Assembly: GCA_044892505.1 (NCBI GenBank)
Contig: CM097882.1
Coordinates: 335,296,001-335,342,821, forward strand
Reading direction: 5' to 3'
Length of the DNA: 46,821 nucleotides
Origin: Schmidtea nova
Lineage: Eukaryota
The position numbers and the translations under genes were made by a program. The notes below the pieces were generated by a model. That model was given only the letters and a program-made list of their open reading frames with translations. It searched no databases and was not told the origin of the DNA. Positions within the stretch are counted from its first letter, which is position 1. Each line of letters opens with the position of its first letter. Positions 3,795 through 37,722 of this stretch are shown piece by piece.

Positions 3795-3928
3795 GTCCTT
3801 CTATCGGCAGCAAGGAACCCGCGAACATAAATGGGGAGTAGTTCTAGAAATAGAGCTCACTTGCCCATCATTGTTCAAACACCTTGCACATTTCCAACTC
3901 GACTATCCAGGGAAATATTCGAGGGTGC
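3795..3928 (+). ncRNA. Conserved two-hairpin structured element, copy A
   Basis: CCTTCTATCGG..GAACCC, then hairpin 1 (GGGGAGTAGTTCT/AGAGCTCACTTGCCC), then hairpin 2 (GCAC-ATTT-CC-AAC-TCGA..TCGA-GG-GTGC). The unit ends ..aaacccagca at 4012. Confidence 0.6.
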
Positions 3929-4013
3929 TTGTGTGTAGCGTAAGCATTTTATGCATGGGTATGGATAGAGGCGTCCCTAGAATGTTTTAATTTAACCCGT
4001 CCAAACCCAGCAT

Positions 4014-4130
4014 AATAAAATTTTTGATTTATAATCTTTACATTCCAATATAATAAAAAATTTTAATTTATAATTTTACATTCTAATATAAGTTTTGATT
4101 TATAATTTTTACATTCTAGGAAAATTTTAA
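4014..4130. repeat. AT-rich minisatellite, about 3 imperfect ~37-bp units
   Basis: Recurrent ttt(g/a)atttataat(t/c)tttacatt(c)(c/t)aata. Confidence 0.6.
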
Positions 4131-4499
4131 TTTAAAATTTTAATATTTTAATTTTCACGTAATATATTATCTATAAAAGTAAATTTTAATTTTTATAACC
4201 AAATCTGAAAATATTATAAGAATTATACCATAATAAAATTTTTATTCACGAATTTTGCAAACTAAATAATTCAATCTAAAAAATTTTAAATATTAAATTA
4301 TCTTCAAAAATAAAATATAAATTTTTAGAAAATTAATTCCCATCTATGGGTTTCTAAAAATAAGGCATATAAAATTCTAGCCGGTTCTTTTGGCGATCTC
4401 TAATATTCAAAATTCTACATGCAGTTTTTAGAAGTGTTTATCAATGAGGTTCATGATTTAGAGTAAAATTCACGAAATACTATCGAACATAATCATTTT

Positions 4500-5000
4500 C
4501 ACCGCTCTTCGAGTAATCATTTACGAGCTTTTATACGTTTGACTTTTCGACCGATTTTTCGAGTTCTTTCGTAGTGAAGTAGAGATGACGTTTATTGAGC
4601 GAAGGCGATTGACGAGACGAATGAATATTTCCTATTCATTTTTATTATGTTCGCATCTTTATGTAGTTATCAGAATCATACCATTTGATGTAAATAAATA
4701 TAAATACGATACTATAAATAAAATATTCATTTGTGTCATTGAATACCATATCGCATTTCAAAAAAATGTAATAGGATTCTAGACGTTAATTATTTTGAAC
4801 AGACCTTGCGCTTGGCCAATCCACTACTCCTAATATATCCAGGTATGAGATGAAGCGTTTTTGGATGTATTTGCTCACTTCGATGAAAAAATGGATCAGA
4901 ACGCTGAAAGGACTCCAGCGAAATAATGATTCACCAAAGTGGCTAATGACGGTACAACGACTAAACAAATTGAGAAATGAGCATTAACAAGAAAAAGCAC
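4500..5000 (-). pseudogene. Decayed pair of overlapping unknown ORFs (a/b), copy 1
   Basis: Homologous to 30130-30510. Frame b SDPFFH..HPKTLHLIPGYIRSSGLAKRKV matches HPNSLHLIPDYMRSSG*AKCKV with several third-position changes. Frame a ends PSLATLVNHYFAGVLSAF*, matching PSLVT*VNHQLAGVCSAF*. Confidence 0.55.
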
Positions 5001-5253
5001 AATTAAAACAAAAATAAAAAAATGAAAAAGCGAGAAAAATGACAAAGATGTGAAATTTGAGTAAAAGTTAATAAATAAAAAGAATAAAAGAATAATTATG
5101 AAATTAATAAGAAAAATAATAAAATAATAATGAATAAAACCTAGGATAATAAAATAAATTATTAGGAAAATCGAGCTTTTAACCAATAAAAAGGTTACTC
5201 GATTCTGATTGGCTGCCTGAACGTCGATTTTACTATAAGGAAGCGCTCAGGTC

Positions 5254-7871
5254 CAGCGCCGGCTCTAGCGGTACTATCACCCCGATGCAAGTTTCTGTTT
5301 AGCGCCCTGAATAAAAAAATATATCAACAAACTCAAATACAAATTAAACTATATTGATTATTGTATATTATTTGAAATTAAACATTTATTTGTTATCAAT
5401 TGTAATTAACAGATATCAATTATGCATAAAATAAATTGCACGATGAATTCAAAATTTTATTTTTCTTGCTTTTATCGAAGCAAATTCATCCAAAATATCA
5501 TTAATTTTTATTTCTTCGCAGATATCGCTTTCAATTGCAATCATTGCCAACCCAACTAATTTCTCTTGAGAAATACTTGATCGCAAATATGTCTTAATTA
5601 GTTTAAGTCTAGAAAATGATCTTTCGCCACTTGCGACAGAAACTGGTAGAGTTAATAGTATCCGCAAAGATATTGTTAAATTTGGAAATATCCCAAATAA
5701 ATCATTTGTATATATATACTGTAAATTATTTAAGGGATCATAATTGTTTAGTAGCGTTATTGTATCTTTAAATATAAACAGTTCATTATATAACTCCGAA
5801 GAATTTATGTCTATTTCTTCACCATCAGTTAATACAGTTTGTAAATCGGTACATTTAATTTTCATTACTTCATCACCCAAATTATAAATTTCATTAAAAT
5901 TTATAAGAAATTGAAACTTTTCAGCATGACTATTCAGAAGTTCGAATCTCTCTATTAAGGAGTTAATTGCACTGTCCACAATTGGAAGAAAGAATGAAAT
6001 TTTATAGTTCTGTTCCGGGTCTCTCGGCCTCTCATCACTACATTCGTAATTAAACATACGTTTTTTACGCCGTCGTAGTGGATTTTCTTTAAATTGAGGA
6101 CAAATATCTACATCTTCTGCCAAGGTTACAGCTTTTTTTATTATATTGTTAAAATTGTCATCTAAGTGGAATTCTTTAAAAAAAGTTATTAAATTATTTA
6201 AATATTTTGTTGATTCATTTAGGTTGGTACTTGAAGATTGGAACATTTTGCTCACAACATTAATTCTGCTTAAAATCTCGTACCAAATTATTAGCGAACA
6301 AATAAATTCGTAGTCAAGCATCATTGCTAAAGATTTAGCTTCAGATTTTGTATTATTGTCATTATTTTCATTATCGTATATGGCAAGTAAAGCATCTAAA
6401 TAATCTCCAATATTGTTTCTTAATGGGCTAAGTGCTTCAATTCTTGATTCCCACCGAGTATCCGATAAAGGTTTGAGCGTAATTTTACTAAATTGTTTTA
6501 ACACATCCCAACGTTTTGTTGAAGCACTGAAAAAATTGTAAAGTTCTTGTATAATACCAAAAAAAATTATAGTTTCTGTATTAACTTTCGCCGCATCACT
6601 GACCACTAAATTCAAGGTGTGAGTCGCACATGGAACAAAGAATGCTCGTGGATTCTCATTCAAAATACGTCTTTGAACACCGCTATGCTTACCGCGCATA
6701 TTAGCACCATTATCATATCCCTGTCCACGTAAATGTTTTATATTTAAATCTAATTCTTTTAGTTTTTCAACTATGCATCTGAGCAAACCTTAGCCAGTAG
6801 AATCATTTATTTCTACGAAACCCAAGAAATGTTCTTCTACGGTAATCTGGTTGCTTTCATTTTTGTGGACAAATCTGACAATTACAGTCGTTTGTTCAGT
6901 GTGACTTATGTCGGGAGTACAATCCAATATTATGGAAAAATATTTGGCATTACTTACCCTCTGGATAATAGCATTCACACATTTTTTTGAAATTAAAGAT
7001 ATTATTTCATTTTGGATATTTTTTCCTAAATAATGAACGGTTTCTTTTTGTATGTTCTGAATTTTCGCGAGATGAGTTTCCATTACAATATCAAATTTAG
7101 AAAATAGTTCAACTAATTTTAAAAAATTACCATTGTTTTTCTGAAAAATTATATCTGACGAGCCGCGAAGAGCTAAATTTTGTTTAGCGAGATATTTTAT
7201 TATTTCAACAATTCTTTCTAACACACTACGCCAATGTCGTTTTTCCCTTTCATATACCTTTTCAAGTTCACTATCTATTGTGGTATGTTTCTCCAACTGT
7301 TTTTTTAGTTGAACCCATTTTATAAACGATGTTAAATGTGATCTACTTACTTCATGGAAACTTAATGTCTTTGATAAATTTTGCCAATTTGAGAAACCAT
7401 CTGTTGTTAAATGACTTTTTTCACCTGCAAATAATTTGCAACAAGAACAGAATACGCAGTTTTTAGAAGATGAATATTTGAGCCACGTTCGTGAAACAGT
7501 TTCATTATTTGCTATCTTACGATAATAATAATTATTACTAAAACTACGACCAGAATCATCTCGTGGATATAATTTATTTTTTATCTGTACCATCGCACCT
7601 TGCTCAATAATAACTTTTCGTATTTTGTCATTAATAATTTCCGGCCAAGTGGCTGGATCATTTGAATTAAATGAACTAAAATCTTCACTTGCTGTTTCGC
7701 TTACTTGCACTGTATTTTCTGTTTGTTGTGGTGAAGATAAATTATATTCAGAAGTTGACATGTTTTCTTAAAAATTGAAAAAAGTGGATAATCACTTTTC
7801 GATTTCAGCGCCCTTTTAGAGTGGCGCCCCGATGCCGTGCATCTTCTGCTTCCACTGTTGAGCCGGACCTG
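5254..7871 (-). mobile_element. Full-length hAT transposon (ZMYM1-like/DUF4371-type transposase), 2618 bp
   Basis: TIRs cagcgccggctc / gagccggacctg. Perfect 8-bp TSD ctcaggtc at 5246-5253 and 7872-7879. Confidence 0.95.
5449..7761 (-). pseudogene. hAT transposase split by one in-frame TAA (6790-6792)
   Basis: The 323-aa and 445-aa ORFs are in the same frame (..DSTG*GLLRCIVEKL). Motifs IILDCTPD, GQGYDNGANM, VPCATHTLNL, SDTRWESR and VASGERSFSRLK are all present. Confidence 0.93.
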
Positions 7872-8109
7872 CTCAGGTCAGTCAATTTATTGTCATTTAC
7901 ACCCATAGAAAAGGTCAATTTTCACTACAAATCACTGTTATTCATACTAAACATATTTCGGAAAACATCAACAACACTCGTAGGAAGACTTAGCTGAAAT
8001 TTGTGACCAATCTGAACGGAACAACTCTGTAAGTAGTTTGTTATAATAAATAAAAATTTTATAATCTAATCACGTTTCGTTTTGCCTATGATTATTTGAA
8101 TATATATAA

Positions 8110-36811: not shown

Positions 36812-36812
<1 letters not shown>

Positions 36813-36848
<36 letters not shown>
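36813..36848. repeat. (TA)n microsatellite
   Basis: Direct reading. Confidence 0.95.
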
Positions 36849-36849
<1 letters not shown>

Positions 36850-37075
36850 TAATGCAATCATTTAATTAACACAACATTCACCCCAGTAGTCCTAAGACAA
36901 TTTTTACAAGAGACTCTGCTGGGCTCTACGAAATCTTCTTCCAGAAAAATGTAACTACATAAATATCTAGCCTATACAAGTAAAAACAAATTACCCACTA
37001 TTTATAAGAACATACAATTAGGAATACCTAATACAGCTGAAAGCTCAAATCTGACAGCTAACGCTCAGAATACAG

Positions 37076-37523
37076 ACCTGATAACCCGTTGTTTCATCCG
37101 TGAGCAGATGAGAGACCAGACGATGAAAACGGAACAGGAAAAACGCACTTCGCCGACATGCAACTTGAGCTTGATGCAGTCAAGTTGGAATTGAGACGAT
37201 GCCTCAGTGCCGTCACCCGATCCTTTATCGATGACGAGCTGAAATCATGCATCCAACAATTCACCTTCCAGCACTGGACAGGCCCAACAGCGCACCAACT
37301 TTCGATAGGAACTGATGCGCACGAACTACCAGTGGAATCAACCTCTGATGTGCCAAGTCAAATACTGGTTAAAAACTGCCCCATTCCGACAACCAAACGA
37401 AAACGTATAGGAGCGAAGTGAAAAAGGCAGAAAAAAGCATGGACCCGAAAATTGATCGCTCAAATTGACCGATTAGATGATATGACAGAGTTGGATCTGC
37501 TGGCGGAGGTCATCCCGTTATGA
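37076..37523 (+). pseudogene. ORF-Y copy D (frameshift near 37140, internal TGA at 37419)
   Basis: ctaac..tacag acceptor-like sequence; FIREQMRDQ / MQLELDAVKLELRRCLSAVTRSFIDDELKSCIQQFTFQHWTGP..GTDAH..KRKR..DDMTELDLL. AATAAA at 37558-37563. Confidence 0.7.
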
Positions 37524-37672
37524 GATAAACCCAAAACCTTTGTGTTTCGTCATTTTAAATAAATGGATTAGAAAAGGGAGTTGTATTACCAGTTTTATTA
37601 ATAACATAGGAGGATTTCTCGAAATATAACTCTGGTAAAAGTGACCGGATAATTTGAAATGTGAAGAGTGAA

Positions 37673-37722
37673 GACCTTCGAACGTTCAGAACCCGAGTTG
37701 GTAAGAGGAGGGAATAGTTTTT
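37673..37722 (+). ncRNA. Structured element copy D, 5' part only
   Basis: GACCTTCGAACGTTCAGAACCCG..GGGAATAGTT, then truncated by AT-rich family Z sequence. Confidence 0.5.

What the first reader, a model, noticed from the sequence alone, without database searches (positions are those of the whole stretch)
3795..37722. Unnamed ~140-nt two-hairpin RNA element with covarying stems, in at least 5 full and 2 partial copies
Seen: copies at 3795-3928, 10933-11072, 18664-18791 (-), 22066-22210 and 27239-27367, with partial or divergent copies at 35609-36090 and 37673-37722. Primary sequence is poorly conserved but the layout is fixed: CCTTCTATCGG, then (G/C)AACC(C)/GACCC, then hairpin 1 with a TAGY/GCT stem and a 3' MAC(Y)TG asymmetric loop, then hairpin 2 = stem-WTTW/AGTT-CC-AAC-inner stem..GG-stem. 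Stems change compensatorily: outer GCAC/GTGC, ATACAC/GTGTAT, AGTAC/GTACT, TTGTTGC/GCAACAA; inner TCGA/TCGA, GTGAAT/ATTCAC, ATG/CAT, GTTAC/GTGAC. Mismatches are G-U type on the ORF-sense strand, which favours folding as RNA of that strand. An AGGG in the hairpin-2 loop (3 copies) could pseudoknot with ACCC. Inference: a functional cis-RNA (packaging, dimerisation or priming signal, 3'-end processing element, or ribozyme) that I cannot assign to any family I know.
Basis: partly seen in the sequence, partly recalled or inferred. Interest (0 to 1): 0.88.

Follow-up and report, generated by a model that had tools for sequence, protein, structure and literature searches.

The report
Conserved 3'-end RNA module of retroposons
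Five copies of a roughly 220-base folded RNA signal sit at the extreme 3' end of a family of decayed mobile elements in an AT-rich invertebrate-like genome; it is real and under selection, matches no catalogued RNA family, and most likely marks the RNA for copying back into DNA.

Summary
A ten-base core of the invariant 11-mer, followed by ACCC at fixed spacing, occurs 5 times against 0 expected. A covariance model built from c3/c5 alone recovers c2, c1 and c4. On the five-copy alignment 93.5% of pair cells are paired and 26 of 32 pairs change on both sides. There are 14 G-U cells against 2 A-C, so the RNA is of the ORF-sense strand. The 35609-36090 'copy' is not one; it is the end of a broken upstream ORF. 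37673-37722 is a plausible truncated copy. Copies share that terminus but start at different points. Four follow a small orphan coiled-coil ORF; c3/c5 are a short non-coding derivative. Between c3 and c5 the module is 91-92% identical with no indels, the body 70%. Rfam gives nothing even at E<=10. Best reading (0.5): a 3'-tail recognition module for target-primed reverse transcription, as in stringent LINE/SINE pairs and R2. No element carrying both a reverse transcriptase and the module is in the window. A ribozyme is neither supported nor excluded.

The parts
3797..4012 (+). Module copy c1 (core 3795-3947 by the model, then the third hairpin to the 3' terminus)
   Evidence: R1 E 0.006 and R2 114 bits. 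Sequence. AT-rich host repeats start right after 4012.
10935..11187 (+). Module copy c2 (core 10933-11090; longer tail; 3' end less certain, within a few bases)
   Evidence: R1 37 bits, E 9e-7, from a model that never saw it. R2 138 bits. The terminal A/C-rich motif resembles that of c4.
18575..18791 (-). Module copy c3 (core 18646-18793)
   Evidence: Identity to c5 drops from about 92% to 45% immediately after the last base.
22068..22292 (+). Module copy c4 (core 22066-22225)
   Evidence: R1 E 0.007 and R2 108 bits. The tail fold shows a closing stem to the 3' end.
27240..27456 (+). Module copy c5 (core 27238-27385)
27240..27250 (+). Example in c5: invariant 11-mer, drawn as a 2-3 bp stem around a 7-base loop UUCUAUC
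   Evidence: Identical in four copies; the first C is U in c3, which keeps a G-U pair.
27273..27318 (+). Example in c5: hairpin 1, with an invariant AG/CU pair step, a one-base 5' bulge and a 3-base 3' bulge
   Evidence: Helices 1-3: 16 pairs, 12 of them with double changes.
27326..27372 (+). Example in c5: hairpin 2, in three tiers, with a conserved 9-base 5' internal loop opposite GG
   Evidence: Helices 4-5: 16 pairs, 14 of them with double changes.
27373..27456 (+). Example in c5: linker and third hairpin. Its closing stem pairs a G/U-rich stretch with the C/A-rich 3' terminus and leaves a few unpaired A/C-rich bases.
   Evidence: z -2.8 for c5; closing stems also in c1, c3 and c4; weak in c2. 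92.5% identity between c3 and c5 with no indels.
37673..37722 (+). c7: probable 5' stub of a module, with a damaged 11-mer and cut off inside hairpin 1
   Evidence: Best non-training hit of R2, but only 9 bits, E 0.74. It lies about 150 bases after an ORF-B remnant.
2996..3478 (+). ORF-B remnant upstream of c1. It is 5'-truncated and otherwise unbroken, and is read in frame with a hAT-like remnant as one 399-codon ORF (2279-3478).
10253..10688 (+). ORF-B upstream of c2 (broken: one frameshift)
21410..21938 (+). ORF-B upstream of c4 (broken: one frameshift; start not defined)
36955..37520 (+). ORF-B remnant upstream of c7 (broken: at least one frameshift and one stop)
9367..9786 (+). ORF-A of the c2 copy: 139 codons, intact, no detectable relatives
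35260..36060 (+). ORF-A remnant of the c7 copy (broken: three in-frame stops and one nested insertion).
   Evidence: tblastn E 5e-4 to ORF-A of c2. No model hit.
22295..22396 (+). Isolated C-terminal fragment of an ORF-A, abutting the 3' terminus of c4
   Evidence: 70% identity over 23 residues to ORF-A of c2, E 1e-5. Its origin is unexplained.
36305..36435 (.). Assembly gap (N), in the ORF-A/ORF-B spacer of the c7 copy; not part of any module

Best explanation
The module is the cis-acting 3' untranslated tail of a family of retroposon-like elements. Read as RNA of the ORF-sense strand, it folds into a small 7-base-loop hairpin, two long hairpins with sequence-conserved internal loops, and a third hairpin that pairs the last 10-15 bases back on themselves, leaving a short A/C-rich single-stranded end. 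I infer that a reverse transcriptase supplied in trans, and possibly the element's own small coiled-coil/basic ORF-B protein, binds this fold and starts DNA synthesis at the adjacent 3' end by target-primed reverse transcription. On that reading every copy keeps the same 3' terminus while 5' ends differ, and a short non-coding derivative (c3/c5) that keeps only the module still multiplied. Shown: the copies, the fold with covariation, the strand, the sharp common 3' end, and stronger conservation of the module than of the body. Inferred: retroposition, protein binding and priming.
For: The common 3' terminus lies 216-253 bases after the 11-mer in five copies, with unrelated flanks beyond it. 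The 5' extents differ. c1 starts inside ORF-B. c4 starts about 1.2 kb upstream of its module. c2 carries ORF-A, ORF-B and the module. c3/c5 have only 0.5-0.7 kb of non-coding body upstream of the module. The window holds no matching upstream repeat of the module and no terminal inverted repeats around the copies. Between c3 and c5 the module and tail are 91-92% identical with 0 indels, against 70% with many indels in the body and 45% in the flanks. Between lineages, stem columns are 32-37% identical but unpaired columns 56-65% (c3/c5 against c1, c2 and c4). Covariation: 26 of 32 pairs. G-U over A-C is 14:2. Known precedent: stringent-type LINE ORF2 proteins bind the stem-loop of their own 3' tail, the stem generally and the loop specifically (PMC4176376). 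An internal loop in the eel UnaL2 tail hairpin is required (PMC1636434). R2 protein binds its 3' UTR, with affinity depending on two stem-loops (PMC11194090).
Against: No element in the window carries both a reverse transcriptase and the module. The RT remnants at 13671-14259 lie 2.5 kb past the end of c2, behind AT-rich filler, and no module follows them. The region upstream of ORF-A shows no RT trace. No target-site duplications were recognisable and there is no poly(A) or microsatellite tail. ORF-A and ORF-B have no detectable relatives, so the element cannot be assigned to any class by its proteins. There are only four independent lineages, all from one 47-kb window.
Confidence: 0.5

Rival explanations
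1. The module is the binding and packaging site for the element's own ORF-B protein (coiled coil plus a basic tail). It assembles the RNA into a particle, and priming specificity lies elsewhere.
For: ORF-B ends 130-320 bases before the module in c1, c2 and c4 (about 150 bases in the c7 remnant), and it is conserved at 25-45% identity across these lineages. It has a basic K/R run suited to RNA binding.
Against: c3/c5 keep the module without any ORF-B, so binding would have to work in trans. The conservation that runs to the very last base fits a role at the 3' end better than packaging alone. This reading overlaps with the best explanation rather than excluding it.
Confidence: 0.15
2. The module mimics a host RNA or protects the transcript. 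It could be a tRNA-elbow-like fold built on the 7-base loop, or a 3'-end stabiliser that recruits a host factor for processing, export or stability.
For: The invariant loop UUCUAUC sits in a 7-base loop and matches the tRNA T-loop pattern UUCRA at four of five positions (pattern as given in bioRxiv 10.1101/2022.12.26.521914). An invariant GG bulge in hairpin 2 could be its partner. Eleven invariant bases suggest a very conserved ligand.
Against: Position 4 of the loop is U, not a purine. ARAGORN finds no tRNA-like gene. No tRNA, tRNA-like or other Rfam model matches. The stem closing the loop is only 2-4 pairs and shows almost no covariation.
Confidence: 0.15
3. The module is a self-cleaving ribozyme of an undescribed class that trims the element's transcripts.
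For: It has many invariant unpaired bases set in covarying helices, and two hairpins with internal loops side by side. Ribozymes are known in other retroelements, for example twister variants in Schistosoma non-LTR elements (PMC8501958).
Against: No ribozyme family in Rfam 15 matches, even at E<=10 on 300-base slices. I saw no hammerhead-type core by eye. The copied DNA includes sequence on both sides of every conserved loop and runs 75-110 bases further to a conserved terminus, so a cut inside the module would remove the conserved end. The retroelement ribozymes I know of lie at 5' ends or in repeats, not 90 bases from a 3' end (my own knowledge).
Confidence: 0.1
4. It is a DNA-level signal, for example the end of a rolling-circle or cut-and-paste transposon, and the hairpins matter as DNA.
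For: There is a hairpin near the 3' end and no target-site duplication was seen.
Against: 14 G-U cells against 2 A-C show that pairing is kept on one strand only. There are no terminal inverted repeats. The copies end in ...AGCA...ACAA...CACA or ...AATA, not in the CTRR end that I recall as typical of Helitrons. A coding sense strand lies upstream.
Confidence: 0.03

Closest known systems
3' tail stem-loops of stringent-type LINEs and their partner SINEs (zebrafish ZfL2-1/2, eel UnaL2; PMC4176376, PMC1636434)
   Same: It lies at the extreme 3' end of retroposon RNA. The hairpins have sequence-specific loops and internal loops while the stems vary. It is shared between protein-coding elements and a short non-coding derivative.
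   Different: It is much larger (about 220 bases in four domains, against one short hairpin). It has an 11-base invariant motif. It has no microsatellite or A-rich end. No RT-encoding partner carrying it was seen here.
R2 3' UTR RNA (Rfam R2_retro_el; PMC11194090, PMC10499050)
   Same: It is a multi-helix 3' UTR of about 200-250 bases with low sequence but high structure conservation. In R2, binding depends on two stem-loops.
   Different: It does not match the Rfam model. The copies are not in rDNA. The adjacent ORFs are small orphans, not an RT.
Half-LINE elements that keep ORF1 but lack ORF2 (mammalian HAL1; from my own knowledge, not tested)
   Same: These are elements with small non-RT ORFs and a LINE-type 3' end that would depend on an RT in trans.
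   Different: ORF-A and ORF-B show no similarity to any known ORF1, and no parent LINE is identified.
Conserved central domains of SINE superfamilies (CORE, V, Deu, Nin-DC, MESC, Snail; PMC4758252)
   Same: A 45-150 bp block is kept across otherwise unrelated short retroposons in invertebrates, and some are predicted to form a hairpin.
   Different: Those domains are central, are conserved in primary sequence, and sit behind tRNA-derived heads. This module is terminal, conserves mainly its loops, and has no tRNA head. I had no reference sequences, so a direct comparison was not made.

Membership tests
Any Rfam 15 family (including hammerhead, HDV-like, twister, twister-sister, pistol, hatchet, hairpin, R2_retro_el, tRNA, 7SL, 5S) | Score at or near the family's covariance-model threshold | tested here: not met
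   There were 0 hits at gathering. No hit overlaps a copy at E<=10 on the whole window. On 300-base slices around c2 and c4, only chance-level hits (9-16 bits, against thresholds of 37-86) touch the modules.
Stringent LINE/SINE 3' tail element | Sits at the common 3' terminus of copies whose 5' ends vary | tested here: met
   Five copies end 216-253 bases after the 11-mer, and the 5' extents differ.
Stringent LINE/SINE 3' tail element | The same tail is carried by an RT-encoding LINE and by its non-autonomous partners | tested here: inconclusive
   The tail is shared by ORF-A/ORF-B elements and the non-coding c3/c5 family. No RT-bearing copy is in the window. The rest of the genome is not available.
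Stringent LINE/SINE 3' tail element | Stem kept by compensatory change, with loop or internal loop kept in sequence | tested here: met
Stringent LINE/SINE 3' tail element | Bound by the cognate RT and needed for copying | not testable with these tools
   This needs protein and RNA work. The mobility test itself lies outside what this report may propose.
tRNA-like structure / T-loop motif | 7-base terminal loop whose first five bases fit UUCRA or YGNRA, with a partner base intercalating | tested here: inconclusive
   The loop UUCUAUC fits at 4 of 5 positions; position 4 is U (pattern from bioRxiv 10.1101/2022.12.26.521914). There is no tRNA by ARAGORN. The tertiary contact cannot be tested.
LTR of an LTR retrotransposon | Near-identical direct repeat at both ends of one element | tested here: not met
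   No second module lies upstream of ORF-A in c2 or in the c7 copy. Neighbouring same-strand copies share only the motifs.
SINE central conserved domains | Primary-sequence match to a named domain, in a central position behind a pol III head | not tested
   Position (terminal) and the lack of a tRNA head speak against it.

The most novel reading that the evidence does not exclude
The module is a new class of structured RNA with its own activity or a specific host ligand, for example an undescribed self-cleaving or tRNA-elbow-mimicking fold built on the invariant 7-base loop and the GG bulge. It would drive the spread of an RT-less element family that encodes two proteins unlike anything in 1.8 billion reference proteins.
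Probability: 0.15. Interest if true: 0.8.

Novelty: new member of a known kind. Interest (0 to 1): 0.45.

Why it matters
Structured 3' tails decide which RNAs a retroelement's enzyme will copy, yet very few have been defined outside R2 and a handful of fish LINEs, and few, if any, beyond the R2 element are catalogued in Rfam. This window gives a clean natural example: four lineages with almost no stem identity but a fixed fold, invariant loops and a mapped 3' terminus. The module is attached both to elements with two orphan ORFs and to a stripped non-coding derivative. It is a ready seed for a new RNA family. It also gives a handle for finding the unknown autonomous partner in the source genome.

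Tried and rejected
(1) An HDV-like or other 5'-end ribozyme of the RT-bearing element downstream of c2: rejected. The c2 element ends at about 11187, and 2.5 kb of AT-rich filler separate it from the RT remnants. (2) An LTR, a Helitron end or a TIR transposon: rejected. (3) 35609-36090 as a copy: rejected. (4) Long-range pairing of the 11-mer with a near-complement on the same strand (at 9779-9789 and 21765-21775): the two sites are not positional homologues, and near-matches other than the five copies number 9 against 5.3 expected, so this is chance. (5) Homologues of ORF-A and ORF-B: Pfam, PHROGs, PDB sequences, two word-based searches and one full HMMER profile search gave nothing real. The single hit is a bacterial FIVAR-repeat surface protein. 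(6) AlphaFold2 of ORF-A without an alignment gave pLDDT 37, so no fold search was run. (7) External copies: pattern scans of metagenome and viral contigs returned only seed-driven chance matches, at most 24 bits against 108-150 for true copies (loci L201-L240 were checked by motif only). These collections hold little eukaryotic DNA, so this says nothing about the source genome. (8) Exact-protein look-ups to find the source contig: none on record. (9) A full-text search for the 11-mer found only unrelated primers.

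
Full report
Setting. The window is AT-rich DNA, about 25-43% G+C, with few long ORFs and no tRNA genes. Its intact or broken ORFs come from transposable elements. 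There is a hAT transposase in two pieces on the minus strand. There are reverse-transcriptase remnants at 13671-14259. There is also an LTR-retrotransposon Pol fragment at 44008-44976, whose nearest relatives (40-50% identity) are in octopus, sea slugs, a bryozoan, Hydra and a sea spider. I take it for nuclear DNA of an invertebrate animal. The species was not identified, and nothing suggests human sequence.

The observation. The described layout is visible in every copy. c3 and c5 are 89% alike over 260 bases. The other copies share only the motifs, and ordinary nucleotide comparison finds no similarity between them. There are therefore four independent lineages.

Test with a model. I built a covariance model (R1) from c3 and c5 alone, with a hand-drawn structure. 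On the whole window with filters off, the next best sense-strand hits were c2 (37 bits, E 9e-7), c1 (E 0.006) and c4 (E 0.007). The shared pattern is thus recovered without having been trained on those three copies.

Covariation. On the resulting five-row alignment (A7), 93.5% of 153 pair cells are standard pairs. Twenty-six of 32 pairs show a change on both sides. No shuffle reaches the observed values. Sliding the 3' partners by 1-3 columns drops pairing to 32-42%. The alignment was fitted to the structure, which favours it. Against that, single-sequence folds recover much of the same fold: hairpin 1 in all copies and hairpin 2 fully in three. RNAalifold on an unfitted MAFFT alignment also recovers hairpin 1. 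Stem columns are only 32-37% identical between c3/c5 and the other lineages, while unpaired columns are 56-65% identical. There are 14 G-U cells and 2 A-C cells, so the fold belongs to RNA of the strand that also carries the upstream ORFs.

Corrections to the finding. The stretch 35609-36090 is not a copy. Neither model finds it. The sequence just before it aligns at protein level to ORF-A of the c2 element (E 5e-4). The stretch 37673-37722 is the best non-training hit of the five-copy model (R2), but it scores only 9 bits. By eye it is the first 50 bases of a module with a damaged 11-mer, cut off inside hairpin 1. These two places, with an ORF-B remnant between them, are one decayed element copy. 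The assembly gap at 36305-36435 falls in its ORF-A/ORF-B spacer. It is the only N run. No reading frame crosses it. The flanks have no detectable similarity to the matching spacers of c2 or c4, so continuity cannot be judged. I did not fill it, and nothing here depends on it.

The unit is larger than described. After hairpin 2 all copies continue with a short conserved linker and a third hairpin domain. Its closing stem pairs a G/U-rich stretch with the C/A-rich last 10-15 bases. This stem is clear in c1, c3, c4 and c5 and weak in c2. The end of the element is sharp. Between c3 and c5, identity is 70% with many indels in the body and 91-92% with no indel through module and tail. It falls to 45% directly after the last base. 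The same kind of A/C-rich terminus closes c1, c2 and c4. Measured from the 11-mer, the module is 216, 253, 217, 225 and 217 bases long in c1 to c5.

What carries it. Upstream of c1, c2, c4 and c7 lies a homologous small ORF, which I call ORF-B. It has a coiled-coil-like region, a conserved E-L-x-x-C-L...F-I...W motif, a serine/threonine-rich stretch and a basic run. It ends 130-320 bases before the module in c1, c2 and c4, and about 150 bases before it in the c7 remnant.

In c2 a second small ORF, ORF-A (139 codons, intact), lies 467 bases further upstream. A broken ORF-A is also present in the c7 copy. The state of these genes, by count only:
- ORF-B of c1 is 5'-truncated but otherwise unbroken.
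- ORF-B of c2 has one frameshift.
- ORF-B of c4 has one frameshift.
- ORF-B of c7 has at least one frameshift and one stop.
- ORF-A of c2 is intact.
- ORF-A of the c7 copy has three stops and one nested insertion.

The c3/c5 family has no ORF-B, only about 0.5-0.7 kb of AT-rich body before the module. Copies therefore share the 3' end and differ in how far they reach upstream. There are no flanking inverted or long direct repeats. This is the pattern left by target-primed reverse transcription with 5' truncation. I could not, however, recognise target-site duplications, and there is no poly(A) or simple-repeat tail.

What it is not. Rfam 15 gives no hit at gathering thresholds. Nothing overlaps a copy at E<=10 on the window. 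Only chance-level hits to unrelated families appear on 300-base slices of c2 and c4. That covers all catalogued self-cleaving ribozymes, the R2 3' element and the small RNAs from which SINEs derive.

ORF-A and ORF-B have no relatives in any search: Pfam, PHROGs, PDB sequences, two word-based searches of 5.8 billion proteins, and one full HMMER profile search of 1.84 billion representatives. The single hit of that last search is a bacterial FIVAR-repeat surface protein, hence spurious. A structure prediction of ORF-A was too poor to use. No reverse-transcriptase trace lies upstream of ORF-A. The RT remnants downstream of c2 belong to another element.

Mechanism. The best-supported reading is a 3'-tail recognition module. 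A reverse transcriptase supplied in trans, perhaps together with ORF-B protein, would bind the fold and begin DNA synthesis at the adjacent short single-stranded end. Three precedents fit. Stringent-type LINE proteins bind the stem-loop of their own tail, the stem generally and the loop specifically (PMC4176376). An internal loop is needed in the eel UnaL2 tail hairpin (PMC1636434). R2 protein binds its 3' UTR in a way that depends on two stem-loops (PMC11194090). The conserved internal loops of hairpins 1 and 2 and the invariant 11-mer would be the specific contacts, and the covarying stems the scaffold. The existence of a stripped derivative (c3/c5) that keeps only the module, kept far better than its body, is what this model predicts. 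The weak point is that no RT-encoding element carrying the module is in view. I put this at 0.5.

Rivals. The rivals are binding by ORF-B for packaging (0.15, partly overlapping), a host-RNA mimic or stabiliser (0.15), a new ribozyme (0.1) and a DNA-level signal (0.03). The mimic idea rests on the 7-base loop UUCUAUC, which matches the tRNA T-loop pattern UUCRA at four of five positions (pattern from bioRxiv 10.1101/2022.12.26.521914). It is a lead only.

An alternative partner is the invariant GGG at the 3' side of hairpin 2. The bases never vary, so neither pairing can be tested here.

Novelty. The kind of element, a structured 3' tail of a retroposon, is known. This particular four-domain module, its invariant motifs and its orphan-ORF carriers are not in Rfam or in any text I could search. 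I could not compare it with Repbase or with the named SINE central domains (PMC4758252), for lack of reference sequences.

An earlier count gave the coordinates of the nested insertion in what I then took for an RNA copy, which proved to be a broken ORF-A. The script output shows a single-frame alignment in which the in-frame stops of that remnant are visible. I have deleted nothing and do not repeat those places here. The consensus lines printed by the alignment tools were not used.

Noticed in passing
window 2279-3478 (+): An intact 399-codon ORF is a chimera. Its first two-thirds look like a hAT transposase remnant (T-R-W-S-S...M-L motif; no Pfam hit). Its last third is a 5'-truncated ORF-B of the retroposon family, joined in frame.
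   Followed up: partly
window 22295-22396 (+): About 33 codons of the C-terminal end of an ORF-A, with its stop, sit directly after the 3' terminus of copy c4. Nothing of the rest of an element follows. It may be a tandem or template-switch product, or a leftover of an older copy; this is unexplained.
   Followed up: partly
window 5449-7761 (-): Two adjacent ORFs (445 and 323 codons), separated by a stop, carry the hAT dimerisation domain and DUF4371. This is a fairly young hAT transposase gene.
   Followed up: no
window 11900-16200 (+): A decayed non-LTR-type element with RVT_1 remnants (13671-14259), on a strongly purine-rich coding strand. No module lies at its 3' side.
   Followed up: partly
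window 43000-46000 (+): An LTR-retrotransposon Pol fragment. The 322-codon ORF at 44008-44976 carries DUF7047 and RNase H (RVT_3). The best relatives are in molluscs, a bryozoan, Hydra and a pycnogonid at 40-50% identity.
   Followed up: partly
window 28079-28248 (+): A tandem array of a 17-base unit (GGGTTTCCCATTAGCTC-like), about 10 copies. It is followed by a 135-base stretch repeated at 39126-39260 (82% identity).
   Followed up: no
window 31388-31616, 33545-33665, 37844-38064: A repeat of about 120-250 bases is present three times, one of them inverted, at 73-83% identity. It is probably a small non-autonomous DNA transposon. One copy lies just past the truncated module c7.
   Followed up: no
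window 35260-36060: A small element with terminal inverted repeats of about 15-20 bases is nested in the ORF-A remnant.
   Followed up: partly
window 11715-11790, 16909-16980, 31072-31143, 36810-36850, 46149-46223: Long (TA)n microsatellites. They account for most of the repeat families and for the weak miRNA-like Rfam hits.
   Followed up: no
window 4803-4960 and 30346-30505: Two stretches of 66 and 82 bases recur in the same order 25.5 kb apart at 84-86% identity. They belong to a further unclassified repeat family.
   Followed up: no
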